From IMG/VR virus record IMGVR_UViG_3300020179_000005, positions 124,001-188,000 of that record: a DNA stretch of 64,000 bases, one strand, 5' to 3'. The stretch's first letter is position 1, and every line of letters begins with the position of its first letter. Below the pieces are notes generated by a model. The model ran no database searches, was not told where the DNA came from, and saw only the letters and a list, made by a program, of their open reading frames with translations. Positions 12,869 to 38,791 of the stretch are shown here, piece after piece. The translations under genes and the position numbers were made by a program.

Positions 12869-13087
12869 GTAAAAGAAATACACAAAAGAAATACACCCCT
12901 GGGTCAGCGGGCTCTGCTGATCCGGGGGTTTTTCTTTTATGACTAGCAGATAGATTGCTAGTTTGCTCCTCTGTTCTATGCAGAAATGCAAACAAGGGCT
13001 GTGCTGTGCATCTGGCACCACAATAAACACGAACCAGATATTCTTGTTGCCCGTTGGGGAATACCCAACAAACAAGGAGGTAAGCTC

Positions 13088-13429
13088 ATGCTTACTGCAA
13101 TCGCAATCGCAATCCTCGTGGGTGTGGCGGCTTCGGCTGTCACTGCCGCGTTCCTCCAAGCCAAGGTCGTCGGTCTGGTTCACCAGATCAAAGACCTCGT
13201 CGTCCAGATGGGTGACGAAAAGGCAAAGGCTCAAGAAATCATCTCCAAGTTGGAGAAGGATGTTGAGTCATGGAAAAGCAGCTCAAGCCGTCACCTGAAT
13301 GACTGGAGTGAGCTGTACAAAGAAAAGCGGGTATGGACTGAGGCACTTGAAAAAGCAGCCGAAGCCAAAGCCGCCAAGAAGGCCAACAAGACCAGCAAGA
13401 AGCCGGTCAAGAAGGCCAACAAGAAATAA
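13088..13429 (+). CDS. Membrane-anchored coiled-coil protein with Lys-rich tail
   Basis: AAGGAGG RBS; N-terminal TM segment; KKPVKKANKK end. Confidence 0.7.
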   Translation: MLTAIAIAILVGVAASAVTAAFLQAKVVGLVHQIKDLVVQMGDEKAKAQEIISKLEKDVESWKSSSSRHLNDWSELYKEKRVWTEALEKAAEAKAAKKANKTSKKPVKKANKK

Positions 13430-13463
13430 CCACGAATACCAACGGGCAACAATGAAAAGGATT

Positions 13464-13497
13464 ACCCCTGGGGACTTCGGTCTCCGGGGGTTTTTCT
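13464..13497 (+). terminator. Intrinsic terminator (near-identical copy at ~14628-14661)
   Basis: CCCCTGGGGAC-TTCG-GTCTCCGGGGG followed by a T tract. Confidence 0.85.
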
Positions 13498-13550
13498 TTT
13501 ATGACTAGCCATCCGGCTTGTCATCACCAACTACCTGAGGAGGTAGCGCA

Positions 13551-14609
13551 ATGAAACTTATGAATAAAATCAAGAGATTGCTCTTTATGAGCAAGACAGT
13601 AGAAACGGATATCGTCTGGGTGGCTTTCTCCACCTGGCCCAATCATGGGGAATGGCGTCTCCGTCGTCGGTACATCTGGGTAAGGAATGATCGCAAGATC
13701 GCTTTCTTTATCACTGGTGTCATCATGCTGTTTACCACACCAGTGGTAGCCAGTGTGGCGTACAATGTTCTCAGCGCAGATGAGGACACTGTGGTTGAAC
13801 AAACCACTGAAACAACTATCAACAGTGAACCTGTTGAACCCGGATACACAGAGTATTGCGAAGGCAATGTGTGGCAGTGGGATGAAGTGGTGCAAAATTG
13901 GACATGTCAAGTTGACATTGATCCTACTACCACTACAACATCAACAACACTGCCTCCTGTGCATCAGGTCCAGTATGTGTGTGATATGGCGCCATCAACC
14001 AGCAGTAACTACTTGTTCAGGACATTTACAAGTAGTAATGGCACGGTGATATCAGATGGTAGTGCAGAAGACACGCAGTACATCTTCCCATTGATCCAGG
14101 AGAGCGACATATACCTACATGTTGATATCATGGGCATTAATGAAGATCATGAATTGTGGCGTGAATTTGCAGATGTGGCAGAATATCTGTCAATTTATCT
14201 GAATAAGAACGTCACGGTTGGTATTGGTGAGGTTGATGAAGACTTCAATGGCATGGTTTTGCCAATCAGGTCTGAATTTGATCCTCGTCAATCAGGTACA
14301 AGCAATGGTGGTGGCGGTGTTGCATGGGCTGAAACGCGAGTAAGTGGCTTCTTTGGCATTTACTTTGCGGATACTGCCATATACATCCGCGAAAACTATT
14401 TGTTTGCTACTGGTGATTGGGCGAATGATCCACATCGATCATTTAAGTACACCGGGTTCAGCACCTTGATACACGAATTTGGTCATGCTATTGGCTTTGA
14501 TCATGTTCATGGCAAGGATGCAGTTATGTCATACGAAAGTGATGAATTTGTTCGTCATTACCTACCGGGTGATGATGCAGGTTATCAGGCACTAATTTGC
14601 AATAAGTAA
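13551..14609 (+). CDS. Membrane-anchored metzincin (matrixin-like) zinc metalloprotease
   Basis: HEFGHAIGFDH (HExxHxxGxxH), Met-turn AVMSY, TM segment, Thr-rich linker. Confidence 0.85.
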   Translation: MKLMNKIKRLLFMSKTVETDIVWVAFSTWPNHGEWRLRRRYIWVRNDRKIAFFITGVIMLFTTPVVASVAYNVLSADEDTVVEQTTETTINSEPVEPGYTEYCEGNVWQWDEVVQNWTCQVDIDPTTTTTSTTLPPVHQVQYVCDMAPSTSSNYLFRTFTSSNGTVISDGSAEDTQYIFPLIQESDIYLHVDIMGINEDHELWREFADVAEYLSIYLNKNVTVGIGEVDEDFNGMVLPIRSEFDPRQSGTSNGGGGVAWAETRVSGFFGIYFADTAIYIRENYLFATGDWANDPHRSFKYTGFSTLIHEFGHAIGFDHVHGKDAVMSYESDEFVRHYLPGDDAGYQALICNK

Positions 14610-14714
14610 GTAATAAGAAAAAGGATCACCCCTGGGGACTTCGGTCTCCGGGGGTTTTTCTTTTATGACTAGGCATCCGGCCTGTCATACCCAACTACCT
14701 AAGGAGGTAGCGCA

Positions 14715-15464
14715 ATGAATAACAAAATCCGAATAATCGAATCAATCAAGGAAGACCTACGCAGGGCCGGACATTCCCTTAGTGATTATCAGGCGGCTTG
14801 GAAGATGTTGCTAGATTCTGTCAAAGTCGAGGGTAATGACAGCAAGTTCAAGGTCATCAAGGTAGAGACCGAAAACAACAAGAAGATGTTTCCGCTTTTC
14901 TTGCACGACACCCTTACTGGCACAATTGACGAAGAAGAATGTTATCTTCACAACGAACTTAGCAGGTTTGAATTTGATATGACTCAAGGGTTTGTGGCTA
15001 ACGAACACGCTTACTTGTTTGCCTATGGAGAAAGCTTGATCGTTCAAGTGATTATTCGTTTTATGAGCTTTATCGGCGACAACTTTATATTTGATGATGA
15101 TGCGACAAAGTCTGGAAATCGAATCGGAGACTTTACTGCACTTGCGTGGGATTACAATAGCTACAAATACATGGTCGATCCACAAACTTATGGATCATCG
15201 CAAGACATTAATAAGGGCGGTCTTAAAGAGTTTTTCTTTCTTGATGACTCTCGTCATGGCTGGGGTCGCCAGAGTGGACTAGAAGTTCTTGCAGATGTAT
15301 TTGATGGTCATCCAGTTATTGAATCTATCTTGCAGACGAACATGCCAACTTTGTATGGCTACAAGCCTCACAATCCAAGGAATCCTTGGGACGTGTTAAT
15401 CGAGAAGCTAGACGAATACAACAAACAACTAATCGAACGAAACAACAAAAAGGAGAATCAATAA
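14715..15464 (+). CDS. Hypothetical protein
   Basis: 249 aa, AAGGAGG RBS. Confidence 0.7.
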   Translation: MNNKIRIIESIKEDLRRAGHSLSDYQAAWKMLLDSVKVEGNDSKFKVIKVETENNKKMFPLFLHDTLTGTIDEEECYLHNELSRFEFDMTQGFVANEHAYLFAYGESLIVQVIIRFMSFIGDNFIFDDDATKSGNRIGDFTALAWDYNSYKYMVDPQTYGSSQDINKGGLKEFFFLDDSRHGWGRQSGLEVLADVFDGHPVIESILQTNMPTLYGYKPHNPRNPWDVLIEKLDEYNKQLIERNNKKENQ

Positions 15465-16177
15465 TGACTAATTCACCAATGCCCAACCCAACACGCTTGG
15501 AGGCTATGCAACCAGTCTGGAACAATCTCCTAGGAGATGCGGTCTTGGTTGACATGAATAACAACAAGATTGAGTTGAAGCTCAATGAATTCAATCACGA
15601 CAAGAAGTTCTTCAAGATCAATGTCGTGGATGAAATCAAGGGTGAACAACATCTGATGGTTCCGTGTCCGATTGCCCTTGTTGAATACAATGGCGTTGAG
15701 TATCATCATAACTACTTACTTCTGTGGGGTGAATCTGCAGTTGTTCAGGTTAGGATAAATTACAGGACCAACTTTCATCCTGAATATCCTGATCACATCT
15801 GGTCGATTGATCCTTCACCGGAGACTGACTTCATGGCTTGGCTATGGAAATCAGATGCGTACGCTGCGGATGTCAAGGTTTTGTGGAACAATCGAAACCC
15901 TGAAGACAATTGCCAAGACTTTAGCCCAGATGGTCGTTTCAAGCTCATTAATTATAACGATCACTTTGAGCTTCACGAAAGGCTCTCAGGCAACTGGGTG
16001 TGGGTAGACGAATTTGTTCTCAATACGACTTTCTTGCTCGCGGATGTGTTGCTTATTCCGACACATGCTGATATGTGGAGTTGGCTTGTTTGGAGGGTAA
16101 ACACCGAGACCGACTTGTCCAATCCGGACAGCTACTTTAATACGAAGTATCACTACAACAAAAGGGAGAATCAATAA
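15464..16177 (+). CDS. Hypothetical protein, apparent paralogue of the preceding gene
   Basis: AGGAG RBS; shared segments YLFAYGESLIVQV / YLLLWGESAVVQV, DFTALAW / DFMAWLW, VLADVF / LLADVL, KKENQ / KRENQ. Confidence 0.7.
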   Translation: MTNSPMPNPTRLEAMQPVWNNLLGDAVLVDMNNNKIELKLNEFNHDKKFFKINVVDEIKGEQHLMVPCPIALVEYNGVEYHHNYLLLWGESAVVQVRINYRTNFHPEYPDHIWSIDPSPETDFMAWLWKSDAYAADVKVLWNNRNPEDNCQDFSPDGRFKLINYNDHFELHERLSGNWVWVDEFVLNTTFLLADVLLIPTHADMWSWLVWRVNTETDLSNPDSYFNTKYHYNKRENQ

Positions 16178-16485
16178 TGCGTAAGCAGAGCAGAAGAACA
16201 CTTCCGAGGTGCAATGCACAGATATGGCCGAAGAAGAAATACAAACTGAAGAACGGTTTGGAAAGAACACCTGCCATACCCGGTCAACCGAATAATCAGC
16301 GGTGCACCAGGTCAATTAGGTGTCCTCACCACAAGAATCGTAATTCAGAATGCCCAGTAATTGAAGAGGTGGGCAAGACAGTATTCCTTTCCTGGGAACA
16401 GGTCAAGGAATTAATCAACAATGGTCACAGAGAAGTGACTGGAAGAAACTACTACGAGGACAGAAAGGAGAGCAGCAATGCCTAA
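16177..16485 (+). CDS. Basic hypothetical protein with Cys/His cluster
   Basis: TAATG coupling; RCNA…RCTR..RCPHH. Confidence 0.6.
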   Translation: MRKQSRRTLPRCNAQIWPKKKYKLKNGLERTPAIPGQPNNQRCTRSIRCPHHKNRNSECPVIEEVGKTVFLSWEQVKELINNGHREVTGRNYYEDRKESSNA

Positions 16486-16645
16486 TACGCCACTAGCGGG
16501 AGAAAAGTACGGTTGTGCAAAACAACGCAGAGTCGTACATTTCGCAGTGACACTTGAACAATACGAAAGTATTGAAGATGACGCCATGATGGCAAACATG
16601 ACGGTATCTGAATACATTCGTTTCAAGTTGGAATTGAATAAATAA
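16478..16645 (+). CDS. Small ribbon-helix-helix-like DNA-binding protein
   Basis: 55 aa read by hand: RVVHFAVTLEQYESIEDDAMMANMTVSEYIRFKL; AAGGAG RBS. Confidence 0.55.
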   Translation: MPNTPLAGEKYGCAKQRRVVHFAVTLEQYESIEDDAMMANMTVSEYIRFKLELNK

Positions 16646-16697
16646 CTAATAAAAGATTGGGGGATGGCCCTTACCCTCTGGGGGCCATCCCTTTTTC

Positions 16698-16830
16698 TTT
16701 ATTGCTAGCCATCCGGTTTCTTGCTACCGGGTGGTTGGCTCTTCGTAGAGGAGATGCGTGCTGCTCTCCTCTGCGCTCCTTTGCCAGAGATGAGTACATT
16801 ACTAGTAAATCCAGTTTTTTTTATGACTAG
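16698..16830 (+). repeat. ~135-bp non-coding two-hairpin unit (second copy ~17136-17271)
   Basis: Both copies lie between two motif copies; stem GGAGA/TCTCC in one versus GGGGA/TCCCC in the other. Confidence 0.7.
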
Positions 16831-16873
16831 GAATATGGTTTCTTAGTTAAGGGTCTTAGGAGGGCCCAGAACA

Positions 16874-17086
16874 ATGAAGGACTTATTCGATTTATTTGAG
16901 GAAGAATTTGATCTCAGATTGCAATGGATAGAAATGCTGGGTAGGCAGCGGATTCTTTGGAATAGTCAGGGAAGAGGAAGAAACGATGAAGTGGACAAAG
17001 AATTTCGTAGGGTTTGCGATGAGTGCTGCAGGATTGGCATCTTGTTGGCAAGGAAGCAGACTGAATTAGAGGAATTTCAACTCTAA
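16874..17086 (+). CDS. Hypothetical protein
   Basis: AGGAGG RBS in a shared leader. Confidence 0.6.
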   Translation: MKDLFDLFEEEFDLRLQWIEMLGRQRILWNSQGRGRNDEVDKEFRRVCDECCRIGILLARKQTELEEFQL

Positions 17087-17335
17087 TTCATGTGTAAGGA
17101 AAGGATGAGTACATTACTAGTAAATTCATTTTTTCTTTATGGCTAGCCATCCGGTTTCTTGCTTTCCGGTGGTTGGCTCTTCTGAGAGGGGATGCGTTCG
17201 GCTCCCCTTTATGCTTTTCTTTGCCAGGGATGAGTACATAACTAGTAAATCCAGTTTTTTTTTATGGCTAGAGTAAAGGTCTCTGGCTAGGCAGCTCTAC
17301 TGCGCCTAAAAGATAGTAGAGGGAAGGAGCTGCTC

Positions 17336-17662
17336 ATGGCTGGCTACAGTAAGCCAGAAATGAAGCAGTGGCTTTTTGACTTGGTTCTGGAAGGTAATAA
17401 AACGCTTCCAGACTGGCAAGTTGAGATCGACACAAGTGTGTGGGCAGCCTGCACACCAGAAGGTTTCTCCTTGCAGCTCAAGCGAACCGTTGGGGATTAC
17501 TACAAAGTGATCCACCTAGGCGTTATTCGCTGGGATCAGTTGGAGACTGCAATGAGGTTTTCGTGGGTCGACCGCGAACTCGGTGTAGTAAAGCCACCCG
17601 AAGAGGTTATCAACTGGATGTTACTGGCCAGTTCAGATGCCTCCGACGATTCGGTTGAATAA
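17336..17662 (+). CDS. Hypothetical protein
   Basis: AAGGAG RBS. Confidence 0.65.
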   Translation: MAGYSKPEMKQWLFDLVLEGNKTLPDWQVEIDTSVWAACTPEGFSLQLKRTVGDYYKVIHLGVIRWDQLETAMRFSWVDRELGVVKPPEEVINWMLLASSDASDDSVE

Positions 17663-17720
17663 ACCGATTTCGTTGTGATTATGATGGCGATCACCATATC
17701 GCCTGACCAAGAGAAGAAAG

Positions 17721-17741
17721 AGGGGCTTCGGCCCCTTTTTC
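17721..17741 (+). terminator. Intrinsic terminator AGGGGC-TTCG-GCCCCT plus T tract (also ~18058, ~19890, ~24753)
   Basis: GC stem with a C(UUCG)G tetraloop followed by Ts. Confidence 0.85.
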
Positions 17742-17799
17742 TTTATGGCTAGTATTTAGGTCTCTAATCTGAGATCGCTAGTCAAGAAAGGAAAACCCA

Positions 17800-18003
17800 A
17801 TGGCACGGAAGAAGTCGGCCACCACGCAGAACCCAAAGCGTCGGCGTGGCTTGACTGGCGCTGGGTACATCAACACGTTTGAGTACCTGCCGCAGATGGA
17901 AGCCGTTCATCCGAGGAACGGCTACGGTCTGCGTGCTCCTTGGGAGTATCGCCGTAACTGGCGGCGCTTCCACAAGAACAGCAAGCCGAAAGGGAAGAAG
18001 TAA
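17800..18003 (+). CDS. Small basic hypothetical protein
   Basis: AAAGGA RBS; ends NSKPKGKK, like 19579..19851 (NSKPKGKR). Confidence 0.6.
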   Translation: MARKKSATTQNPKRRRGLTGAGYINTFEYLPQMEAVHPRNGYGLRAPWEYRRNWRRFHKNSKPKGKK

Positions 18004-18183
18004 TTCTTCCATGACACATGATGGCGATCACCATGTCGCCTGACCAAGAGAAGAAGAAGGGGCTTCGGCCCCTTTTTCTTTATGACTAGGACTTAGGTCT
18101 CTAGTTATCGTGCCAGGTATGAGCGACACACCTAATCAACAAGTGTCGCACCTTTCCCGAAAGGGAGAAAGGGGGTATCCATC

Positions 18184-18654
18184 ATGGATACTTTCCTGGT
18201 AGTAATGGCAACGCTCTTCTTGGGCGTTGTGACCCTGGTTTCGGTGATCAATGCCGAAGCCATCAACAAGCACTGGAATCTCGCAATGGAGGCGTACGCA
18301 GATCTTGCGTATTCTTTCCAGGAGTTCTGGTGGACAAGCATCAGGCCTGAAATCAGGGGTCTGATGGGCAAAAAGAACCCAGTCTGGGAACCGCCAACGG
18401 CACTTGGGTACTACTTTGGGGATATCGTCAAGCTTGACGACTCTGAGAAGTGGTACATGGTGTTGTCCAGCGGTATCTGGATGATTTCAGTGAGCTCACC
18501 GCTACTCGTCCATGAGTGCGATGACACACTGAAAGTCGTTCAGGCCAAAGGCTGGAAGTACGTGTACAACAACGAAAAAGTCGTTGAACACGTACCCGCA
18601 GATGCCGTAGAGGCATTTCTCGACAGAATGATCGAGGAGAAGATCTACGGCTGA
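18184..18654 (+). CDS. Hypothetical protein with N-terminal TM segment
   Basis: 156 aa between motif and terminator. Confidence 0.65.
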   Translation: MDTFLVVMATLFLGVVTLVSVINAEAINKHWNLAMEAYADLAYSFQEFWWTSIRPEIRGLMGKKNPVWEPPTALGYYFGDIVKLDDSEKWYMVLSSGIWMISVSSPLLVHECDDTLKVVQAKGWKYVYNNEKVVEHVPADAVEAFLDRMIEEKIYG

Positions 18655-18803
18655 ATGTAAGTAGTTGATTGGCACGAGTCAACTACCTACAGAAGAATTA
18701 GGGTGGTCCCTTACCCTCTGGGGGACCACCCTTTTTCTTTATGACTAGTTTTTAGGTTACCAAAGGTGGCCGCTAGTCAAGGGTCTTAGGAGGGCCCACA
18801 ACA

Positions 18804-19445
18804 ATGGAAGCAATGTTCATCATGCTCATGGAGTTCATGAGCAAAGTCATGAATGCTGTGGAGACACGGCATCATGACGGAAAGCGTACGAAAGGCGAAG
18901 GCTCCGGCATTCATTCTTTCGTTTCGCTTGTACGATGGATCAATCAGAACAAAGGCTTGGTCAAGGCAGCAATTGCCAATGACAGAGAAATGTTCGAGTT
19001 GATCATGAAGCAGGCAAGTCAAACGTTGAAGACATACATCAGAACCGGTGTGTGGAACACGGTGTACTGGGTTACCTCATTCGATGGTTACTTCTACCGC
19101 CACCTGTTCGTCGACGACGACACACGCTACAAAATCAATCCGAAAGTTCACTTCGTGTGGACTCCTCGGAATGGACAAAGCATGACCAAGGACGAAGACA
19201 ATCGTCTTTTTGGTAAAATAAGAAACGTTGCAAACAGTCTGGATAAGGCTGGATACGACGTGTTTTGCTATGACATCGAGTGGGAACCAATCACACTAAA
19301 CATTGGAGACGGCGCGGAAAAACGCGTCAAATACAGCTGTGGAAATGTGTTTGAGCTTCTCGAAGAGTTCCTCGACCGGCCAAGCCAAGAAATCAGTAAA
19401 CTGGTTTGGCAAGCAAAAATGGAAGACAAACTCCAGCACGAATAA
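18804..19445 (+). CDS. Hypothetical protein
   Basis: 213 aa, AGGAGG RBS. Confidence 0.7.
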   Translation: MEAMFIMLMEFMSKVMNAVETRHHDGKRTKGEGSGIHSFVSLVRWINQNKGLVKAAIANDREMFELIMKQASQTLKTYIRTGVWNTVYWVTSFDGYFYRHLFVDDDTRYKINPKVHFVWTPRNGQSMTKDEDNRLFGKIRNVANSLDKAGYDVFCYDIEWEPITLNIGDGAEKRVKYSCGNVFELLEEFLDRPSQEISKLVWQAKMEDKLQHE

Positions 19446-19578
19446 ATGAATAAATAAAGACTGAGGGTGGTTCGGGAAATCCGGCCACCCTCTTTCTTTA
19501 TGGCTAGGAATTAGGTCTGTAGTTTTAGACCGTTAGCTTTTGTGTGTGTATGTGTCAATCAAGTACCAGGAGGTACTC

Positions 19579-19851
19579 ATGTCAATACACGAAATGAACG
19601 ACGACTTCCTCGACAGGATGTTTCTCTTGCAGGAACGCCTGGAAAAGGATGATCGTCAAGGAAACAAAATCCACAAGCGACGAGGTACACACTTCGTCAG
19701 GTACTGGTATTTCCCAAACGAGGACCTGTTCATCGTTGGGAAGTGTGAATCAATGGGCAAAGTGGTGAACACCTGGAGTAAGGAAACAACGTTTCTTCTT
19801 TCCAGCGAACCACCACGCAAAAGCAATAGCAAGCCGAAAGGCAAGCGATAA
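19579..19851 (+). CDS. Hypothetical protein
   Basis: AGGAGG RBS before ATG 19579. Confidence 0.65.
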   Translation: MSIHEMNDDFLDRMFLLQERLEKDDRQGNKIHKRRGTHFVRYWYFPNEDLFIVGKCESMGKVVNTWSKETTFLLSSEPPRKSNSKPKGKR

Positions 19852-19964
19852 CAACCAACACACACACACACACAAATGAAATAAGGGAGAGGGGCTTCGG
19901 CCCCTCTTTCTTTATGACTAGGAATATGGTTTCCTGGTCAAGGGTCCAAGGAGGGCCCAAAATA

Positions 19965-20858
19965 ATGAAAAGCATTAACGACATGGAAATGAAGCGACAG
20001 AAATTGACACAACTATGCCAAGAGGTCACAAGTGATGTAATTAAGAAACATGGTTCCCTACGTAATCAATGTGGCCATGGAGCGTCTGAGCTCAGGAAAC
20101 GGGCAAGGAAATCGGGAATTAAGCTCAATCTTCAGGGTGGCTTATTTAATTATGGCACTGAGCACAACTGGTGTGTTGACCCAGAAACAAACGAGATATA
20201 CGATCCAACTGCAGAGCAGTTCATTATTGGAATCAATGGCCTACAGAATGAAGAGACCTCCAAGCTCTACTTGTCATTGAACGATGATGAAATATCTGAT
20301 TTGCAATCTCTTGCCAGGAGCAAGGGATTTATTTGGAGCTTCAGTGAGGGTGTTTCGCAAATCGTCTTTGGCTACCAAGTAAGTATCGCAAATCAGAAAA
20401 TAGTTGACAAGTTTCGGTTTTACTATCCAGACTTGACTCATGTTGTTGTTCGCAACACAAAGGATGAAGTACGGAAAGCAAAGAATGGTAACACCTATGC
20501 TGTTATCAGAAACAATGTTGTTGAGTTTCATATCGATAAAATGAACGTCAAGAAATGGAAGAATGACTTAAACGTAACAGGTCCTGAAGTGGTGAGTTAC
20601 ATTGTGTTCAAGAATCCGAACAACAGCTATTGGATCAGGGTTGTTGAACAAAGGCTGTTTGTTTCAAAGAATGGAAAGACTGGTGTTATAACCAAACTTG
20701 GTGAAGAATTGAAGAACATCAAGATCAATAAGAAAGGCAAGCTTTACAGGACAATAAAGATCGAAGACGGATGTTTTGTGAATGAAATGATTGATCAGCA
20801 TTACTTTTTGCTAATCAAGAGATTTGAAGAACTTACATCACGTAATAGTGATCAATAA
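19965..20858 (+). CDS. Protein with N-terminal transglutaminase/papain-like Cys-His-Asp domain
   Basis: NQCGHGA…EHNWCVD…IYDPTAEQF pattern. Confidence 0.6.
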   Translation: MKSINDMEMKRQKLTQLCQEVTSDVIKKHGSLRNQCGHGASELRKRARKSGIKLNLQGGLFNYGTEHNWCVDPETNEIYDPTAEQFIIGINGLQNEETSKLYLSLNDDEISDLQSLARSKGFIWSFSEGVSQIVFGYQVSIANQKIVDKFRFYYPDLTHVVVRNTKDEVRKAKNGNTYAVIRNNVVEFHIDKMNVKKWKNDLNVTGPEVVSYIVFKNPNNSYWIRVVEQRLFVSKNGKTGVITKLGEELKNIKINKKGKLYRTIKIEDGCFVNEMIDQHYFLLIKRFEELTSRNSDQ

Positions 20859-20973
20859 ATATTCTTTAGCCGATTGATATACAACTAGTAAATTTAACTA
20901 CATTATTAATCTTTTATTTTTATGACTAGTCATCCGACTTAGTCATCAAACCAAAAATGGGGAGGATAAACCC

Positions 20974-23016
20974 ATGAAAGCAATAAGGTGGATTAACAGG
21001 TTCCAAGACAACTCGTTTCAAGAGATCGAAGTTGATCTAGACAATCTGAAAGCAAAGAACACTTATCAGTTAGTAGAAATCATGCGTCAACTCAACATAA
21101 TCGAGAACAAGCTAGAAACAGGTATTGGTATTGTTGTTGATGAAAACGACCAAAAAGTGGCCGATTGGTTCACTTTCCCAAATCTCAAAGTCTTGATTTA
21201 TGATGAGATTGATGAGTTGGCTGCTAATGAACAAAATGCTGCTCGTGAATCAAAGAACATGATCAGCGGGTACAGGTTTCGGAAATTTGGAACAACGGAA
21301 GTTGGAAAGAACCTTTGGCCAGAGTCACGGTATTATTTAGCACAGATCGTCAATGCTGAGACCGGTGAAGTAGATAAGAACATGTTGGGACAATGGGGTT
21401 ACACCAAGCATGACTGGGGTCAGTGGATATGGGGCCTAGAAGTTAATCTCAATAAGAGAAAGAATGGCAAGGGGTGGACAATTCATTGTTCTTTAAGTGC
21501 GACTTATTACAACAACTATGAATCAATATCAGATGAAAGAAGCAAGAATTATGACCCCCTTTATGTCAAGCTCACAAACGCACTTGAAACAGCGGGAATT
21601 AAAATGAAGCACAAGAAAACGTGCACGACTTTCTTTCAACCAATGAAAGAAATGATCTTTGTCAATGAAACTAAGGTTGGAGTACGTTGCTTGACCACAA
21701 AAGTCGATAAAAATGGATTCAAACCATTGTGGGGGCAATCTCTTTCTCAGCAATTGAAATTCAAGTTTCTACAGGGTGAAGTACAGATTTTGGTCAATGA
21801 TGCGTATCGTTGTCTAGAAAAGGTATACAAGAAGACAGACATTTTGCCAATTTGTGAAAACCTGTCATTTGACAGAATTTTCCCAGACGAATACAATAGT
21901 TTGAGCTACCCCATGCCGACTCAACTGTATGGAATAACTCAAGATCAGTTGCGTTATCTTTCTGGTGCCAAAAACATTCACCAAGCATTAAATAATGCTT
22001 TTGGTACTCCTGTAGAGAAAATGGGCAAAGAAGAATCACGGTATATCTTTCTTGAGATTCCTATCAAAGAAAATTCTGGAATTACAAGAAGAGCATTTGG
22101 TGGGCAACAACAATTCAAGCATTGGCACCATTTGTGCTCGGCCATTCAAATGGTCAGAATGTTCAAAGCATTTGGACTTAATTTCTTTGAACAAATGAAG
22201 ATTGATTTTGTTCTGCCACCAATACCTGTAATGCACAAGGTTGAAAGACTTGGAGGCGATCAGAATTATGCGATATACCCAATAAGAACAGGGTCTAATC
22301 CGGGGAATTACCGTATATACAATGACATACAGAACATGCAAAAGTACTTCAAGACCTTTGGTGCAACAACTGCATACAAGAATCAAATCTTGCAGACTTT
22401 TACATGGGACGAAACTGATACAAAGAAGCTGGAAGAGCTCGCAAAAGAACCACATCGCACCCACGCCACCGCAGCGTGTGAGCGTCAGAATCAGATCTAT
22501 CATCTATTAAATCAAGTTGCTGACACTCTTTCTTCATTGAAGAAAATTCCTGTTGGAAATCGCAGAAAAGCGGTTATTGAACAGGTAAAGAGGCAGAAGT
22601 ATGACTTTGATCAAACTCACGATTACGTAGTTACAGAAGCAATGAAATACAAGAATGAAGCCAGGCCAACGAAAAATACCAGGTTGATCAATTCGTTCGA
22701 TGGCAAAGAAATCATTGATGGAGTAATCTTCAGGGCTCCTAAGACCACGCATGATCTTTACCTGTGGGGTACACAACAGAACAACTGCATCGGAACTTCT
22801 TGGGCAGAAGTTGTTGCCGACAGATATCAATTCATCGTTGGCTTTGAATATGCAGATACGGGTAAGTGGATTGGACATGCAAGGTTCGTACTCCTTGATT
22901 CCGGCAAAGAGCTTGAAATTCAAGAGTTTCGAGGTAAGGGTGAAGAGCCACGAGAAGATCTACGTAAAGAGCTTGTCAAGTGGATGAAGAGCAATTTGGT
23001 AAAGAAGGAAAACTAA
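20974..23016 (+). CDS. 680-aa protein with C-terminal PcfJ-like domain
   Basis: FRAPKTTHDLYLWGTQQNNCIG…IQEFRGK resembles the PcfJ motif. Confidence 0.6.
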   Translation: MKAIRWINRFQDNSFQEIEVDLDNLKAKNTYQLVEIMRQLNIIENKLETGIGIVVDENDQKVADWFTFPNLKVLIYDEIDELAANEQNAARESKNMISGYRFRKFGTTEVGKNLWPESRYYLAQIVNAETGEVDKNMLGQWGYTKHDWGQWIWGLEVNLNKRKNGKGWTIHCSLSATYYNNYESISDERSKNYDPLYVKLTNALETAGIKMKHKKTCTTFFQPMKEMIFVNETKVGVRCLTTKVDKNGFKPLWGQSLSQQLKFKFLQGEVQILVNDAYRCLEKVYKKTDILPICENLSFDRIFPDEYNSLSYPMPTQLYGITQDQLRYLSGAKNIHQALNNAFGTPVEKMGKEESRYIFLEIPIKENSGITRRAFGGQQQFKHWHHLCSAIQMVRMFKAFGLNFFEQMKIDFVLPPIPVMHKVERLGGDQNYAIYPIRTGSNPGNYRIYNDIQNMQKYFKTFGATTAYKNQILQTFTWDETDTKKLEELAKEPHRTHATAACERQNQIYHLLNQVADTLSSLKKIPVGNRRKAVIEQVKRQKYDFDQTHDYVVTEAMKYKNEARPTKNTRLINSFDGKEIIDGVIFRAPKTTHDLYLWGTQQNNCIGTSWAEVVADRYQFIVGFEYADTGKWIGHARFVLLDSGKELEIQEFRGKGEEPREDLRKELVKWMKSNLVKKEN

Positions 23017-23132
23017 TAAATATTCTTTAGCCGACTGATATAAGACTAGTATATTTAACTACATTACTAGTCTTTTTTTTTATGACTAGGAATATGGTTT
23101 CCTAGTCAAGGGTCTTAGGAGGGCCCAAAACA

Positions 23133-23672
23133 ATGAAAGCAAACCGCTACTACATCGCTGGGACTGGCTCTCGTGAGCTGATTCTGGATGTTGACAAGCG
23201 TCGTGAGGTCCGTGATTATCTTGCGGACCTTCTGACAAAGGCAAAGGAAAAGCATGGTGACAAGTTGATTGTCATCAGCGGAATGGCAGAAGGCTTTGAT
23301 GAAGCACTTGCTCGTGCTGCAATCATGGCTGATGTGTCGTTTATCGCGGCAATTCCCAGCCCTGATTACATTGAGTACTACTGGGGTAAAACCAGTATGC
23401 TCAGGCGTAACAGAATGAGTGAAGCACAGGAAATCCTGTCAAAGGCACAAGAAATCGTTTACGTGTGCCCATCAAGCCCAAGCAAACGTGGCAATGGCGT
23501 TAAGTATCCGCAAAACGGTGGTGCAAACATCGACCGAAACGAGTGGATGGTCGACCATGCAAACATTGTCTGGGTGTACAATCCAACTACTCCAGGTACC
23601 GCTAGGTGCTATGCCTACCTCAAGAAGGTTGGCAAGCCCGCATTTATCATTGACACCACTAAAAAGCTTTAA
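23133..23672 (+). CDS. SLOG-superfamily (YspA/DUF1273-like) nucleotide-binding protein
   Basis: IAGTGSR, VISGMAEGFD, AAIP, RNEWMVD, GT..C motifs. Confidence 0.75.
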   Translation: MKANRYYIAGTGSRELILDVDKRREVRDYLADLLTKAKEKHGDKLIVISGMAEGFDEALARAAIMADVSFIAAIPSPDYIEYYWGKTSMLRRNRMSEAQEILSKAQEIVYVCPSSPSKRGNGVKYPQNGGANIDRNEWMVDHANIVWVYNPTTPGTARCYAYLKKVGKPAFIIDTTKKL

Positions 23673-23795
23673 CCAGCTAATTGGTTGGTAATAAGGGATC
23701 TATATATGGCTAGTAAATTTAACTATATTACTAGTCTTTTATTTTTTATGGTTAGCCATCCGGCTACCAAAATCAACAATGGGGAGGAAAAACCC

Positions 23796-24227
23796 ATGAG
23801 TAAGCGGTTTGATCAAGAAATACAGAAGGCAATACAGAAGGGTTACGTTGAAGGACTGACCATCAAGTGCGAGCGATGTGCTGGCACTGGATTGTGGCCA
23901 ACCATCGAAGATCCGGAAGGCTTGCACCACAAGTGCTTTCGGTGCGATGGAACTGGACAAGTTCAGATAATGAGCATCGCGCAAGTTGCACTCATCAGGA
24001 AACTGATGTATGTGGACCAAGTTATTGCCAGGGAGTCCGCTTTCGGAGGCACTACCGCGCAATGGTCACGTATCGAATACAAGATGGCTGGCCATTTGGC
24101 TGGCATGCCCTATCTGTCAATGGCAGAAGGCAGAAAAATCATTGGTGAACTGATGAACTCGAAGAAGACCAAGGAAAAAGAAAGCCTTGATCAATGCGAG
24201 ATCGACTTCGGTCACATCTACGAATAA
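23796..24227 (+). CDS. Protein with DnaJ-type zinc-finger repeats
   Basis: CERCAGTG and CFRCDGTG. Confidence 0.7.
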   Translation: MSKRFDQEIQKAIQKGYVEGLTIKCERCAGTGLWPTIEDPEGLHHKCFRCDGTGQVQIMSIAQVALIRKLMYVDQVIARESAFGGTTAQWSRIEYKMAGHLAGMPYLSMAEGRKIIGELMNSKKTKEKESLDQCEIDFGHIYE

Positions 24228-24372
24228 CAAGGCAAGCAAGAAAAGAAGAAGGGGTCCAAAAGGGCCCCTTTTTCTTTATGACTAGTACTTAGACTTCAAG
24301 TATCAGTCAGGGTTGAAGTGTCGTTTCCCAAATCAAAAATGACGCAATGTACATCCATACAAGGAGGATGAC

Positions 24373-24690
24373 ATGAACAAGCAAATCAAGTGCGGTGCCT
24401 GCGGGCATACGCACCCGACCGTGGCAGAGGTATTCAGCTGCCACAACACACTGGGGGTTTTCAAACTCCAGGAAGCGGATGAACTGGCGAAAGACATGCC
24501 AAAGCGCCAGTTCGTCAAGACTCCAAAGGCACAGGAGCCCAAGACCTACCAGGTCCATGTGTTCCCGACCAAGGAGGGCGCCGAGGCATTCATTGCCAAA
24601 ACGCCAAAGACCCGACTCGGAACGACGAAAGTCAAGTACGTGGACGGACAGCCCGAGAAGACCTATCAGGTCATCGAGAGCTTGAAGTAA
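24373..24690 (+). CDS. Hypothetical protein with N-terminal CxxCxxxH..C zinc site
   Basis: AAGGAGG RBS; KCGACGHTH…SC. Confidence 0.65.
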   Translation: MNKQIKCGACGHTHPTVAEVFSCHNTLGVFKLQEADELAKDMPKRQFVKTPKAQEPKTYQVHVFPTKEGAEAFIAKTPKTRLGTTKVKYVDGQPEKTYQVIESLK

Positions 24691-24838
24691 TAACCTAGCA
24701 GGGGAAAGAAGTCACCCCTGCAAACCAAGAGTCGGGTTCAGCCGACAGTAGAAGGGGCTTCGGCCCCTTTTACTTTATGACTAGTACTTAGGTCTCTATT
24801 CTGAGGCCGCTAGTAGCTCAAGAGAAAGGAAACTCATC

Positions 24839-27481: not shown

Positions 27482-27739
27482 TTAATCCTTTATTGATTGT
27501 GAATACCTATGGGTATTCTAAATAGGTCTCTCTGGCTGGCTAGGCTCTAGGTTGCTTGGCTGGCTTGGGTTGTTGCGTGTTGACTCTTCTTACGGGTCTA
27601 ACGCGCAAAATAGGGGTCTTTCCCCGTTTGGCGTTGCTGAACGGGTTTGACTCTGAAAATAGGGGCTCATTCCCGAGCCTCTTCAGGCGGTCACTGCCTG
27701 CGTAAGAAAGTGGCAAAGCGGTCAAGGAGCCGCAGCAAT

Positions 27740-28252
27740 ATGAAGCAGATACTGAAGGCGCTCTACGCCAACAATGATTGGCAGGAGCGAGTGAACACCG
27801 AGACGGGCAAGCGATTCTGGCAGGTGCTAGTTGGGCCTGTTGGCTTTGATGCCGTTTCGGCGGAAGACCGTCAGGTCAACGCGTACAACTGGGCAATCAA
27901 CGAAGATGACCAGTTGACCGTGGAAGTGGACGGTGCCAAGCACTCAGTGAACCTGAAGTCCTATGTGGACGAAGTGGTTCGCAGTGCGACTGGTGGAATC
28001 AACCCGAAGGGTGTGTTGCGCGTCTTGTGCGACGACATCGTGCTGGGGAAGGCCACCGAGTTGACCTACAAGGATGGCAGCGTCCACCCGCAAATCACGG
28101 TGTACCCCGTGAACTTCGTGGTTGAGACCTACCAGCGGAGCAGGCCAGCAGCGGTGAAGATGGACAACGCAGCGTTCGCAGCGCTGAAGAGTCGGATGTC
28201 GCAGCCGACGCGGCCAGTGGTGGTCGCTGAGAGCAGTGACGCACCGTTCTGA
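27740..28252 (+). CDS. Hypothetical protein, possibly SSB-like (acidic C-terminal SSDAPF)
   Basis: AAGGAG RBS; beta-rich body; GC-rich codons; followed by a GC hairpin. Confidence 0.55.
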   Translation: MKQILKALYANNDWQERVNTETGKRFWQVLVGPVGFDAVSAEDRQVNAYNWAINEDDQLTVEVDGAKHSVNLKSYVDEVVRSATGGINPKGVLRVLCDDIVLGKATELTYKDGSVHPQITVYPVNFVVETYQRSRPAAVKMDNAAFAALKSRMSQPTRPVVVAESSDAPF

Positions 28253-28468
28253 CCGAACGGCGGAATGTGTTGGTGGGGGGGCTTCGGCCCCCCTGCCAAT
28301 AAAAAATTGGTCTAGGTATATAGGTTCTTGCTATCCCTCCTTGGGGACACCCAGTCCGGCGGTGCTATGCACTTCTCACCGTCGGGCTGGGTCGTCTTTT
28401 CGTGTGGGTGCTTGAATGGTAATACAAAAAAAATAGGGGTAACATCCAAGTCAACAGTGGAGGGCATC

Positions 28469-28675: not shown

Positions 28676-28679
28676 GATG

Positions 28680-38759: not shown

Positions 38760-38791
38760 TAACAACAATATATGAAAGGTAAGTATATTAT

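What the first reader, a model, noticed from the sequence alone, without database searches (positions are those of the whole stretch)
12936..24784. 17-copy TTTATGRCTAG motif: candidate phage-specific promoter fused to each terminator
Seen: almost every intergenic gap over 12 kb reads terminator hairpin (or an ACTAGTAAAT-type AT block), T tract, TTTATGRCTAG, leader, RBS. The last copy sits directly upstream of polymerase 1, and I saw no copy outside this interval. It does not resemble a sigma70 -35/-10 pair. Inference: it is the promoter for a virion-packaged or phage-encoded polymerase, or alternatively a recombination or processing site.
Basis: partly seen in the sequence, partly recalled or inferred. 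Interest (0 to 1): 0.8.

Follow-up and report, generated by a model that had tools for sequence, protein, structure and literature searches.

The report
Phage early promoter–terminator cassettes
An uncultured ~210-kb lake phage puts the same conserved signal (terminator hairpin, T-run, TTTATGRCTAG, then a stem-loop) in front of each early transcription unit up to its first RNA-polymerase gene; it is most likely a promoter read by a phage polymerase rather than the host's, which makes this untested polymerase family directly testable.

Summary
There are 15 exact and 2 one-mismatch copies of TTTATGRCTAG, all on the + strand, all between genes, all within 12936-24784 (0.07 expected by chance). 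The conserved unit is longer: pyrimidine/T-run, TTTATG-R-CTAG, N3, three non-G bases, RRYY. Eleven copies abut a GC-rich hairpin plus T-run terminator. Six follow an AT-rich ACTAGTA block.

The same cassette, with lineage variants (GCCTAG, GGGTAG), recurs upstream of the polymerase-1 gene in related metagenomic phages whose polymerase is only 33-67% identical.

The new point is that GRCTAG is the 5' arm of a hairpin that begins at the TG of TTTATG. It shows compensatory and G·U changes and is more stable on the + strand, which points to RNA. My best reading (0.6) is a promoter for a non-host polymerase that starts at that G, giving transcripts with a protective 5' stem-loop.

Polymerase 1 and polymerase 2 both model as two-barrel RNA polymerases (QDE-1/RDR2-like and P23-45 gp64-like). 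A second motif, AAAATAGGGG (8 copies), starts right after polymerase 1 and leads the operon holding polymerase 2, which suggests a cascade.

No RNA data were available, so the start site and the reading polymerase are inferred. I rate it a new member of a known kind.

The parts
12930..12963 (+). Cassette 1: T-run, TTTATGACTAG (12936-12946), 5' hairpin to 12963
13492..13523 (+). Cassette 2: T-run, TTTATGACTAG (13498-13508), hairpin 13502-13523. Heads the 352-aa metalloprotease-like gene 13551-14609.
14656..14687 (+). Cassette 3: TTTATGACTAG (14662-14672), hairpin 14666-14687. Heads the operon 14715-16645. 90% identical to cassette 2 over 105 nt.
16692..16739 (+). Cassette 4: one-mismatch copy TTTATTGCTAG (16698-16708), 14-bp hairpin 16704-16739. 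Heads an ORF-less structured RNA unit.
16814..16849 (+). Cassette 5: TTTATGACTAG (16820-16830), hairpin 16824-16849. Gene 16874-17086.
17130..17177 (+). Cassette 6: TTTATGGCTAG (17136-17146), hairpin 17142-17177. Heads the second ORF-less structured RNA unit.
17255..17289 (+). Cassette 7: TTTATGGCTAG (17261-17271), hairpin 17265-17289. Gene 17336-17662.
17736..17784 (+). Cassette 8: TTTATGGCTAG (17742-17752), two-tier hairpin 17746-17784. Gene 17800-18003.
18073..18107 (+). Cassette 9: TTTATGACTAG (18079-18089), hairpin 18083-18107. Gene 18184-18654.
18732..18779 (+). Cassette 10: TTTATGACTAG (18738-18748), two-tier hairpin 18742-18779. Gene 18804-19445.
19491..19538 (+). Cassette 11: TTTATGGCTAG (19497-19507), hairpin 19502-19538. 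Gene 19579-19851.
19905..19940 (+). Cassette 12: TTTATGACTAG (19911-19921), hairpin 19915-19940. Gene 19965-20858.
20913..20945 (+). Cassette 13: TTTATGACTAG (20919-20929), hairpin 20923-20945. 680-aa PcfJ-like gene 20974-23016.
23073..23108 (+). Cassette 14: TTTATGACTAG (23079-23089), hairpin 23083-23108. Gene 23133-23672.
23739..23769 (+). Cassette 15: one-mismatch copy TTTATGGTTAG (23745-23755), hairpin 23749-23769. Gene 23796-24227.
24269..24309 (+). Cassette 16: TTTATGACTAG (24275-24285), hairpin 24279-24309. Gene 24373-24690.
24768..24814 (+). Cassette 17: TTTATGACTAG (24774-24784), two-tier hairpin 24780-24814. Heads the polymerase-1 gene.
12895..12929 (+). Intrinsic-terminator-like hairpin (16 pairs) plus T-run, abutting cassette 1. 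It closes the upstream + strand block that begins with the RecA gene.
13464..13491 (+). Terminator-like hairpin (12 pairs) plus T-run before cassette 2
14628..14655 (+). Terminator-like hairpin (12 pairs) plus T-run before cassette 3
16659..16693 (+). Terminator-like hairpin (15 pairs) plus T-run before cassette 4
17721..17736 (+). GGGGCTTCGGCCCC-type hairpin with an A-tract upstream and T-run downstream (looks bidirectional), before cassette 8
18057..18074 (+). Same hairpin type before cassette 9
18700..18732 (+). Terminator-like hairpin (14 pairs) plus T-run before cassette 10
19463..19492 (+). Terminator-like hairpin plus T-run before cassette 11 (stem limits read by eye from the fold)
19888..19907 (+). 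Terminator-like hairpin before cassette 12
24251..24268 (+). Terminator-like hairpin before cassette 16 (stem limits read by eye from the fold)
24754..24767 (+). Terminator-like hairpin before cassette 17 (stem limits read by eye from the fold)
23039..23078 (+). AT block before cassette 14: a degenerate motif copy (TATAAGACTAG), an AU-rich 8-bp hairpin on ACTAGTA/TACTAGT, and a T-run. Weak terminator or decoy.
23703..23744 (+). AT block before cassette 15: TATATGGCTAG (one mismatch), a 9-bp AU-rich hairpin, and a T-run
20872..20918 (+). AT block before cassette 13 (ACTAGTAAATTTAACTAC... weak hairpin, T-run)
16703..16819 (+). ORF-less unit 1: three-hairpin RNA, MFE -51.3 kcal/mol, z-score -6.05. 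It ends in an ACTAGTAAAT block plus T-run.
17141..17260 (+). ORF-less unit 2: paralog of unit 1 (85% identical) with compensatory changes in the second hairpin
24839..27481 (+). Polymerase 1, 880 aa, last gene of the motif-1 cluster. Two-barrel fold like QDE-1/RDR2. Invariant H480 and D484-x-D486-G-D488.
27607..35647 (+). Context: eight exact AAAATAGGGG copies (27607, 27656, 28430, 29209, 29448, 30505, 30838, 35638). Candidate second promoter class.
36174..38759 (+). Context: polymerase 2, 861 aa. Two-barrel fold like P23-45 gp64 and P74-26 gp62. Invariant H449, D453-x-D455-D456. Second gene of the operon led by the AAAATAGGGG copy at 35638.

Best explanation
The 17 copies are composite terminator-promoter cassettes that split the early region of an uncultured ~210-kb freshwater phage into one- to four-gene transcription units. 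The last unit encodes polymerase 1.

Each cassette reads, in order:
- the terminator of the preceding unit (a GC-rich hairpin, or an AU-rich ACTAGTA hairpin, followed by a T-run);
- an AT-rich promoter core made of that T-run plus TTTAT;
- a start at or next to the G of TTTATG (inferred);
- a transcribed GRCUAG that pairs with a downstream CUAGYC-type complement, so the RNA begins with a stem-loop;
- a leader with a ribosome-binding site.

The promoter is not a sigma-70 type. Its near-invariance within the genome and across distant relatives fits recognition by a phage-specified polymerase. The most likely candidate is one brought in with the virion: polymerase 2, or another polymerase encoded outside the window. 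The known parallels are phiKZ, AR9, N4 and P23-45.

Polymerase 1, made from the last cassette, would then read the AAAATAGGGG class that starts right after its gene and leads to polymerase 2.

Shown here: the motif statistics, its placement, its conservation, the + strand hairpin with covariation, the polymerase folds, and the order of the two motif classes. Inferred: that the motif is a promoter, the start position, which polymerase reads it, and that the 5' stem-loop stabilises the mRNA.
For: - Statistics and placement. 15 exact copies against 0.07 expected, all on the + strand. All 17 are intergenic, 51-105 nt upstream of start codons or heading ORF-less RNA units.
- Terminators. 11 of 17 copies directly abut canonical hairpin plus T-run terminators. 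The first copy follows a 16-pair terminator that closes the preceding block, so each unit needs its own start signal.
- Extended pattern not imposed by my selection. Positions -7 to -1 are pyrimidine only. Positions 14-16 are almost never G. Positions 17-18 are purines in 99-100% of 78 copies, and 19-20 are pyrimidines in 97-99%.
- Conservation. The same cassette, in the same order and strand, lies upstream of the polymerase-1 gene in relatives at 67%, 46%, 43%, 35% and 33% polymerase identity. Variants are TTTATG[ACG]CTAG and TTTATGGGTAG.
- Hairpin. GRCTAG is paired as the base of a hairpin in 64 of 78 copies, against 25% of shuffles. With upstream bases offered to the fold, the helix starts at T4 or G5 in 45 of the 67 copies where the CTAG is paired.
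- Strand asymmetry. The fold of positions 5-45 averages -11.5 against -6.0 kcal/mol for shuffles (p = 3e-14). The + strand is favoured over the - strand beyond what composition explains (p = 9e-8). Both effects largely vanish if folding starts at position 17.
- Mismatch types. G·T 40 against A·C 13.
- Covariation in the 23-nt hairpin class. 88.9% of cells pair, with 15 double changes against 3.9 in shuffles (0 of 500 reach it). G·U is the commonest pair at two positions.
- ORF-less units. Both keep a 13-14-bp helix with several G·U pairs that needs motif positions 6-19 to be in the RNA.
- Polymerases. Polymerase 1 matches QDE-1/RDR2 (E down to 6e-8) with an invariant DxDGD. Polymerase 2 matches P23-45 gp64 (E 3e-5 to 6e-5).
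- Second motif class. AAAATAGGGG occurs 8 times against 0.10 expected, starts 126 nt after the polymerase-1 stop, and its last copy leads the polymerase-2 operon. That arrangement is kept in L148 and L149.
- Precedents from the literature. P23-45 vRNAP reads AT-rich promoters that include the nvRNAP gene (PMC10770324). Jumbo-phage early promoters are ~10-nt AT-rich conserved motifs, and phiKZ late promoters are T(-3)ATG(+1) (PMC7598289).
Against: - No transcript 5' end is mapped. No RNA run was listed for this phage.
- No polymerase is tied to the motif, and no virion polymerase is identified in the window.
- The purine-purine-pyrimidine-pyrimidine block at fixed positions 17-20 is conserved whatever its role in the hairpin (loop, 5' arm or 3' arm). 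An AT-rich stretch precedes it. That fits a T7-like -17 to +6 geometry with the start at position 17 at least as naturally as a start at position 5.
- Several hairpin tests used copies chosen or delimited by the + strand fold, which leans toward the structure.
- The most distant relatives carry both polymerase genes but show few or no cassettes in the 10 kb upstream of polymerase 1.
Confidence: 0.6

Rival explanations
1. It is a promoter, but with a T7-like geometry. TTTATGRCTAG is the -17 to -7 recognition block, the AT-rich positions 13-16 are the melting region, and transcription starts at the purines at positions 17-18. The hairpin would then be a DNA-level or incidental feature.
For: Positions 17-18 are purines in 99-100% and 19-20 pyrimidines in 97-99% of 78 copies, at fixed distance, whatever their structural role. 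Positions 14-16 almost never hold G. The conserved span from 0 to 22 is 23 nt, like T7-family promoters (from memory). Jumbo-phage early motifs are centred near -10 from the start (PMC7598289). In the two-tier copies an inner stem begins exactly at position 17.
Against: Folding from position 17 loses most of the excess stability and the strand asymmetry. G·U pairs and compensatory changes involve positions 5-13, which would not be transcribed. The two ORF-less RNAs would lose half of their conserved 14-bp helix. The ccatcc-type copies have a GC-rich stretch, not an AT-rich one, just before position 17. Neither polymerase is T7-like.
Confidence: 0.15
2. It is an RNA processing and stability module, not a promoter. 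Long early transcripts would be cut in the single-stranded U-rich linker (UUUUUCUUUAU) between two hairpins, by RNase E or a phage nuclease. The upstream RNA would keep a 3' hairpin and the downstream RNA a 5' hairpin, as RNase III does in the T7 early region.
For: The structure is RNA-type and strand-specific. An AU-rich single-stranded segment flanked by stem-loops is the classical RNase E context (from memory). The motif would lie inside the RNA.
Against: The upstream hairpins are canonical terminators whose T-run abuts the stem, so read-through would have to be the rule at 11 sites. The first copy already sits behind a 16-pair terminator that ends another gene block. The near-invariance of TTTATG plus the fixed block at 17-20 is tighter than host RNase sites usually are (from memory). 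Nothing else in the 12-kb cluster looks like a promoter.
Confidence: 0.1
3. It is a promoter for the host RNA polymerase, either with a host-phylum-specific consensus or with a phage-supplied sigma-like factor.
For: Many phages use the host enzyme for early genes. The terminators are of the bacterial intrinsic type. The host is unknown. A relative encodes a WhiB-like protein, which hints at an actinobacterial host.
Against: There is no -35/-10 pair, and sigma-70-like sites are at chance level. Eleven of 11 core positions are nearly invariant across 17 copies and across phages at 33-67% polymerase identity that probably differ in host. That is the signature of phage-polymerase promoters, not host ones. 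The genome encodes two RNA polymerases of its own.
Confidence: 0.07
4. It is primarily a recombination substrate or mobile regulatory cassette (like the PeSLs of T4-type phages), or the operator of a DNA-binding regulator, with no promoter activity of its own.
For: Identical terminator, motif and leader blocks precede unrelated genes: no pair of early proteins matches at E < 1e-3, yet cassettes 2 and 3 are 90% identical over 105 nt, and four copies share the GGGTCTTAGGAGGGCCC leader. Metagenome contigs break and cross-map at the cassettes. PeSLs show that such composite elements mediate shuffling (PMC2839356, PMC4122927). GACTAG...CTAGTC is an inverted repeat.
Against: PeSLs are promoters as well, so this is an added role rather than a rival. 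The spacing of the inverted halves varies from about 4 to 25 nt, and G·T changes preserve pairing on one strand only, which does not fit a dimeric protein site. The joints have about 30-nt sides, the size expected from k-mer contig ends at repeats, so they do not show recombination.
Confidence: 0.05

Closest known systems
Pre-early/early promoter cascade of Thermus phage P23-45 (vRNAP gp96, nvRNAP gp64; PMC10770324)
   Same: Two paralogous two-barrel single-subunit RNA polymerases and two unrelated motif classes. A strongly conserved AT-rich class heads the first genes, including the gene of the second polymerase. Conserved elements also occur at the terminators. Polymerase 2 here matches the gp64 and gp62 structures.
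   Different: The motif sequences are unrelated as far as the text allows a comparison. Here both polymerases are free-standing ~870-aa proteins in a ~210-kb genome, and no tape-measure fusion was seen in the window. Polymerase 1 is closer to QDE-1/RDR2 than to gp64. The promoter is fused to an RNA 5' hairpin. Nothing here is tested experimentally.
Early (vRNAP) and late (nvRNAP) promoters of jumbo phages phiKZ and AR9 (PMC7598289)
   Same: A ~10-nt AT-rich, highly conserved, phage-specific motif lies upstream of early operons and can be found by sequence alone. phiKZ late promoters are T(-3)ATG(+1) with the downstream region important, which matches a start at the G of TTTATG here.
   Different: Those polymerases are multisubunit beta/beta'-like enzymes. 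Here they are single-chain members of the QDE-1/gp64 clade. The conserved transcribed GRCTAG, the hairpin and the fixed RRYY block have no described counterpart there.
PeSL composite terminator/promoter cassettes of T4-type phages (PMC2839356, PMC4122927)
   Same: A stem-loop terminator is fused to an early promoter, repeated between small early genes of unknown function. Cassettes are shared in front of unrelated genes.
   Different: PeSL promoters are host sigma-70 early promoters, and this motif is not. Recombination between cassettes is documented for PeSLs and not shown here.
T7 class III promoters with the phi10 5' stem-loop leader (from memory)
   Same: A ~23-nt near-invariant phage promoter, a G start after an AT-rich stretch, transcripts that begin with a stabilising stem-loop, and the polymerase gene as the last early gene.
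   Different: The polymerase family is unrelated: no Pfam RNA_pol hit, and a two-barrel fold. In T7 the early genes are read by the host enzyme from sigma-70 promoters.
Hairpin promoters of coliphage N4 virion RNA polymerase (PMC4496689; hairpin details from memory)
   Same: Early promoters of a virion-delivered polymerase combine a conserved sequence with an inverted repeat.
   Different: N4 hairpins are small (5-7 bp stem, 3-nt loop), lie upstream of the start and form on the template strand. Here stems are 6-14 bp, loops 4-13 nt, and the structure is favoured on the non-template/RNA strand.

Membership tests
Phage-polymerase-specific early promoter (phiKZ/AR9/N4/P23-45 type) | A conserved motif confined to intergenic DNA, co-oriented with the genes, clustered in one block of small genes | tested here: met
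   17 of 17 copies are on the + strand and intergenic, within 12936-24784
Phage-polymerase-specific early promoter (phiKZ/AR9/N4/P23-45 type) | The genome encodes a non-host RNA polymerase | tested here: met
   Polymerase 1 matches QDE-1/RDR2 and has DxDGD. Polymerase 2 matches P23-45 gp64.
Phage-polymerase-specific early promoter (phiKZ/AR9/N4/P23-45 type) | The motif is conserved, with lineage variants, in related phages at the same genomic place | tested here: met
   L001/L011, L003/L004, L005, L012, L013, L017. It is weak or absent in the most distant group.
Phage-polymerase-specific early promoter (phiKZ/AR9/N4/P23-45 type) | Primary transcript 5' ends at a fixed offset, and initiation by the phage enzyme in vitro or in the presence of rifampicin | not testable with these tools
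   No RNA run was listed, and the phage is uncultured
Sigma-70-type bacterial promoter | -35 and -10 hexamers 16-18 nt apart | tested here: not met
   The scan is at chance level (32 against 26.7 +/- 4.8) and no site coincides with the motif
T7-family (single-subunit, Pol I-like) promoter | A cognate T7-like RNA polymerase (Pfam RNA_pol) | tested here: not met
   No Pfam hit, and the folds are two-barrel. This covers only the 64-kb window.
N4-type hairpin promoter | A small hairpin (5-7 bp stem, 3-nt loop) on the template strand upstream of the start | tested here: not met
   Stems are 6-14 bp and loops 4-13 nt. The + strand is favoured and G·T exceeds A·C.
PeSL composite terminator-promoter cassette | A stem-loop terminator directly fused to an early promoter, repeated between small early ORFs | tested here: met
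   11 of 17 copies have a GC hairpin plus T-run abutting the motif
PeSL composite terminator-promoter cassette | The promoter part is a host sigma-70 early promoter | tested here: not met
PeSL composite terminator-promoter cassette | Cassette-bounded insertions, deletions or gene swaps between close relatives | tested here: inconclusive
   Shared cassettes precede unrelated genes. The contig joints have ~30-nt sides and may be assembly artefacts.
Intrinsic (rho-independent) terminator | A GC-rich stem-loop immediately followed by a T-run | tested here: met
   Met for 11 of 17 upstream elements. The six AT blocks are weak or doubtful.
Intercistronic RNA processing site (T7 RNase III / RNase E type) | 5'-monophosphate ends produced from a longer precursor | not testable with these tools
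   No RNA data. The sequence context is compatible with it.

The most novel reading that the evidence does not exclude
The hairpin may be part of the start signal itself rather than just an mRNA cap-like stabiliser. Polymerases of the QDE-1 clade prefer single-stranded templates; crAss-like gp66 was assayed on denatured DNA (bioRxiv 10.1101/2020.03.07.982082). The cassette could be a structure-dependent promoter in which the extruded or transiently single-stranded hairpin presents the conserved WWW-RR loop or junction to the enzyme. Alternatively, the RdRP-like enzyme could recognise the GRCUAG stem-loop in RNA and copy or extend RNA. Either would be a start mechanism evolved independently of N4.
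Probability: 0.1. Interest if true: 0.85.

Novelty: new member of a known kind. Interest (0 to 1): 0.55.

Why it matters
Promoter recognition by the QDE-1/gp64 clade of two-barrel RNA polymerases is almost unknown. No early motif was found for crAss-like gp66, and only P23-45 has mapped motifs.

This window offers two sharply defined, comparatively validated candidate promoter classes next to the genes of two compact (~870-aa) polymerases. Simple in vitro pairing experiments could therefore assign specificity. They could also define a new orthogonal polymerase-promoter-terminator set and show how a jumbo phage without multisubunit polymerases runs its temporal programme.

The cassettes also give a marker for annotating early regions in this widespread group of freshwater phages. 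They may explain how early genes are shuffled in front of shared regulatory blocks.

Tried and rejected
- Near-identity search of 12-30 kb against deposited phage genomes: no match.
- Pfam and PHROGs on the early genes and both polymerases: almost nothing. The exceptions are PcfJ-like, a marginal matrixin hit, and downstream a helicase, a subtilase and AAA proteins.
- Sequence search of polymerase 1 against PDB: nothing. Only the fold search worked.
- Rfam at gathering threshold: only six tRNAs, and no family for the ORF-less units.
- RNA runs: none was listed. The DNA holders are lake and freshwater metagenomes.
- Laying metagenome contigs on 14600-20500 to look for cassette-bounded rearrangements. 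It gave joints and loose ends at the cassettes, but with ~30-nt sides and clear cross-mapping between paralogous leaders, so I do not count it as evidence of recombination.
- Collection-wide scan for the T-run plus motif.
- Literature search for the motif strings: only unrelated primer or plasmid hits. The 'moraphage' lineage paper reports no RNA polymerase genes, and I could not link it to this phage.
- A template-strand (N4-like) hairpin: rejected on strand asymmetry.
- CTAG avoidance outside the cluster: not seen. Observed/expected is 0.84 outside and 1.85 inside.
Distant relatives keep both polymerases even where the cassette is not detectable, so this says nothing.

Full report
**1. The observation**

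An exact search for TTTATGRCTAG finds 15 copies. All are on the + strand and all lie between 12936 and 24784. Dinucleotide-preserving shuffles give 0.07 copies, and none of 100 shuffles reaches 15.

Allowing mismatches adds two copies that share the whole context: 16698 (TTTATTGCTAG) and 23745 (TTTATGGTTAG). The other near-matches in the window lack the context.

An alignment of the 17 copies shows a longer conserved unit:
- a T-run at -6 to -1;
- the 11-mer;
- a conserved T at position 14;
- G at position 17 in 17 of 17 copies, and G at position 18 in 14 of 17;
- then YYTC.

Eleven copies abut a GC-rich hairpin whose T-run runs straight into the motif. Six follow an AT-rich ACTAGTA-type block.

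A start codon with a Shine-Dalgarno sequence follows the motif start at 51-105 nt for 14 copies. Copy 12936 has only a weak ORF call. Two copies head ORF-less units.

Sigma-70-like sites in the region are at chance level.

**2. What the genome is**

The window has no close match among deposited phages. It is held nearly letter for letter by lake and freshwater metagenomes and by IMG/VR contigs of up to 209,701 bp. The source is therefore an uncultured freshwater jumbo phage.

Polymerase 1 is the 880-aa ORF 24839-27481.
- It has no Pfam or PDB sequence match.
- A language-model search pointed to eukaryotic-type RdRPs.
- In 24 homologs, H480 and D484-x-D486-G-D488 are invariant.
- The AlphaFold model (pLDDT 86) matches maize and Arabidopsis RDR2 and Neurospora QDE-1, with E from 6e-8 to 1e-5.

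Polymerase 2 is the 861-aa ORF 36174-38759.
- It is a distant paralog of polymerase 1 (E 6e-11 over 200 residues).
- It keeps an invariant H449 and an unusual D453-x-D455-D456.
- Its model (pLDDT 83) matches the non-virion RNA polymerase gp64 of P23-45 and gp62 of P74-26.

Both are thus two-barrel single-chain RNA polymerases of the clade that holds QDE-1, crAss-like gp66 and the P23-45 enzymes (PMC10770324).

**3. Comparative evidence**

Relatives were fetched through polymerase-1 homologs. They carry the same cassette, on the same strand, in the same place upstream of the polymerase gene:

| Locus | Polymerase-1 identity | Motif form | Copies |
|---|---|---|---|
| L003/L004 | 67% | TTTATGACTAG | 1 directly upstream (contigs end there) |
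| L005 | 46% | mostly [TC]TTATGACTAG | about 11-13 |
| L001/L011 | 43% | TTTATG[ACG]CTAG | 12-14 |
| L012, L013 | 35-36% | TTTATGGGTAG | 7-8 |
| L017 | 33% | TTTATGACTAG | 7 |

I pooled 78 non-redundant copies. Positions that I did not select on are still strongly constrained:
- -7 to -1 are pyrimidines only;
- 14-16 almost never hold G;
- 17-18 are purines in 99-100% of copies;
- 19-20 are pyrimidines in 97-99%.

The most distant group (L014-L016, L019, L021-L023) keeps both polymerase genes. It shows few terminators and few or no cassettes in the 10 kb upstream. One element there again reads terminator, TTTATG, then a hairpin that starts at the G, but with a different stem.

**4. The hairpin, which changes the anatomy**

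- In 64 of 78 copies, five or six of the six bases GRCTAG pair with a downstream complement as the base of a hairpin. In shuffles this happens in 25%.
- With six upstream bases offered to the fold, the helix begins at T4 or G5 in 45 of the 67 copies in which the CTAG is paired.
- In a fixed window (positions 5-45) the + strand folds at -11.5 kcal/mol on average, against -6.0 for shuffles (p = 3e-14).
- The + strand beats the - strand by 3.4 kcal/mol, against 1.2 for shuffles of the same composition (p = 9e-8). Both effects largely disappear if folding starts at position 17.
- With placement by Watson-Crick matches only, the mismatches are G·T 40 against A·C 13. Shuffles give 19.7 against 12.6.
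- For the 18 copies with a 23-nt hairpin, 88.9% of cells pair. Double changes number 15 against 3.9 +/- 1.5 in shuffles (0 of 500 reach it). Slid controls pair at 50% or less.
- In that set, pair 7-27 runs through A-U, G-C and C-G, and G·U is the commonest pair at two positions. This subset was picked by its predicted fold, which leans toward the structure.
- The lineage change from CTAG to GTAG is matched by a downstream CTATCC in L012.

The hairpins come in three registers: compact, two-tier with an inner GGYCTC stem, and a ccatcc-loop type. The 5' base of the stem stays fixed in all three.

The two ORF-less units (16703-16819 and 17141-17260) are 85% identical paralogs. Each keeps a 13-14-bp helix with several G·U pairs that uses motif positions 6-19, and a second hairpin with compensatory changes. 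Their z-scores are -6.05 and -2.23.

Taken together, the structure forms in + strand RNA that includes the G of TTTATG. The RNA 5' end therefore lies at or just before that G.

**5. Mechanism**

Each unit is closed by a canonical terminator, and the first cassette sits behind a 16-pair terminator. The simplest reading is one start signal per unit.

I therefore read the T-run plus TTTAT as an AT-rich promoter core and the G as the start. The known analogy is T(-3)ATG(+1) of phiKZ late promoters, where downstream sequence also matters (PMC7598289). GRCUAG and its partner would form a 5'-terminal stem-loop, as in the T7 phi10 leader (from memory).

Near-invariance within and between genomes, and the lack of any -35/-10 pair, point to a phage-specified polymerase.

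A second motif class supports a cascade:
- AAAATAGGGG occurs 8 times exactly, all on the + strand, against 0.10 expected.
- It begins 126 nt after the polymerase-1 stop.
- Its last copy (35638) leads a two-gene operon whose second gene is polymerase 2.
- Copies at nearly the same distance, about 525-590 nt before the polymerase-2 gene, occur in L148 and L149.

This is the layout of P23-45, where a virion polymerase reads AT-rich promoters that include the gene of a second polymerase with its own promoter class (PMC10770324). By analogy with phiKZ and P23-45, the enzyme that reads TTTATGRCTAG would arrive with the virion. It could be polymerase 2, which is made later and is far more conserved and widespread than polymerase 1 (52-84% identity over the 120 listed of 253 hits). 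It could also be an enzyme encoded outside the window. This assignment is inference only.

**6. Open point on the start site**

The fixed RRYY block at positions 17-20, preceded by an AT-rich stretch, is conserved whatever its place in the hairpin. The span from 0 to 22 is 23 nt. That is the geometry of a T7-type promoter with the start at position 17.

I rank this second because it leaves the RNA-type covariation of positions 5-13 and the helices of the ORF-less RNAs unexplained. Only 5'-end mapping can settle it.

**7. Other rivals**

- A processing site between two hairpins fits the RNA evidence. It would need read-through of 11 canonical terminators and a promoter that I cannot find.
- A host promoter is unlikely, given the lack of hexamers and the conservation across phages that probably have different hosts.
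- A role in recombination is plausible as an addition. Identical cassette and leader blocks precede unrelated genes, as with PeSLs (PMC2839356, PMC4122927). The metagenome contigs gave only ambiguous joints at repeats.
- An N4-type template-strand hairpin is contradicted by the strand asymmetry.

**8. Verdict**

The feature is real and highly non-random, it is conserved, and a phage-specific early promoter fused to terminators explains it best. The start lies inside the motif and the transcript carries a 5' stem-loop.

It is a new member of a known kind. The specific interest is that it belongs to an uncharacterised pair of two-barrel polymerases whose promoter recognition is otherwise nearly unknown. 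For crAss-like gp66, no early motif was found (bioRxiv 10.1101/2020.03.07.982082).

Noticed in passing
window 27607-35647 (+): A second motif, AAAATAGGGG, occurs 8 times exactly (0.10 expected), all on the + strand. It starts 126 nt after the polymerase-1 stop, and its last copy leads the operon that holds polymerase 2. In some copies the G-run sits only 5-8 nt before the ATG. It is conserved in relatives (L003, L005, L012, L013, L148, L149) and is replaced by AAAAGGGGG(G) in L001/L011.
   Followed up: partly
window 36174-38759 (+): Polymerase 2 carries an invariant HGGHDxDD, a DxDD that is one residue shorter than the DxDGD of polymerase 1, and models like P23-45 gp64. It is far more conserved and widespread (253 hits, the 120 listed at 52-84% identity) than polymerase 1 (56 hits, mostly 33-70%).
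   Followed up: partly
window 16703-16819 and 17141-17260 (+): Two paralogous ORF-less units of about 115 nt. Each runs from a motif copy to an ACTAGTAAAT block plus T-run and folds into three hairpins with compensatory changes. They are candidate phage small RNAs and match no Rfam family.
   Followed up: partly
window 40330-40671 (+): Ten copies of RAATGAATCA at an exact 37-bp period (one gap of 36). They lie in the gap after ORF 39758-40291 and run into the start of ORF 40591-41127. This is an iteron-like array and a possible replication origin or protein-binding array.
   Followed up: no
window 19538-19556 and 19856-19874: A (GT)n-like run just upstream and an (AC)n run just downstream of the small gene 19579-19851. 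They are inverted with respect to each other and could pair over about 300 nt.
   Followed up: no
window 20955-20976, 23777-23798, and the leaders at 16846-16876, 18776-18806, 19937-19967, 23105-23135: Two leader types present the Shine-Dalgarno sequence in a hairpin loop: ATGGGGAGGAWAAACCCATG and GGGTCYWAGGAGGGCCC. Unrelated genes share them. The first type also precedes the polymerase-1 gene in distant relatives (L014-L017, L021-L023).
   Followed up: partly
proteins P0003 and P0004 (loci L003, L004): In some relatives the polymerase-1 homolog is 1041-1062 aa and carries a NADAR domain (PF08719) fused to it.
   Followed up: no
L001 14478-14741: A relative (43% polymerase identity, ~214-kb contig) encodes a WhiB-like protein downstream of polymerase 1. 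This hints at an actinobacterial host for that lineage. None was found in the window ORFs I scanned.
   Followed up: partly
window 17716-17741, 18053-18078, 19885-19910, 24748-24773: Four GGGGCTTCGGCCCC-type terminators have an A-rich tract upstream that mirrors the T-run, so they look bidirectional. The scan flagged three of them (those at 17.7, 18.1 and 19.9 kb) on the - strand as well.
   Followed up: no
window 33671-48149 (+); 9241-10203 (+); 7182-8357 (-): Six tRNA genes (Arg-TCT, Leu-TAA, Asn-GTT, Lys-TTT, Val-TAC, Met-CAT), a full RecA homolog just upstream of the early cluster, and a ClpX/ClpB-type AAA protein on the opposite strand. Gene orientation switches near 8.4-9.2 kb.
   Followed up: no
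window 14600-20500, runs X1, X15, X18, X19: Metagenome contigs from four lake samples break, cross-map and show strain-level substitutions at the cassettes and shared leaders. For example, loose ends at 17782 continue into the polymerase-1 leader. This shows the cassettes share stretches long enough to confound assembly and, potentially, to recombine.
   Followed up: partly
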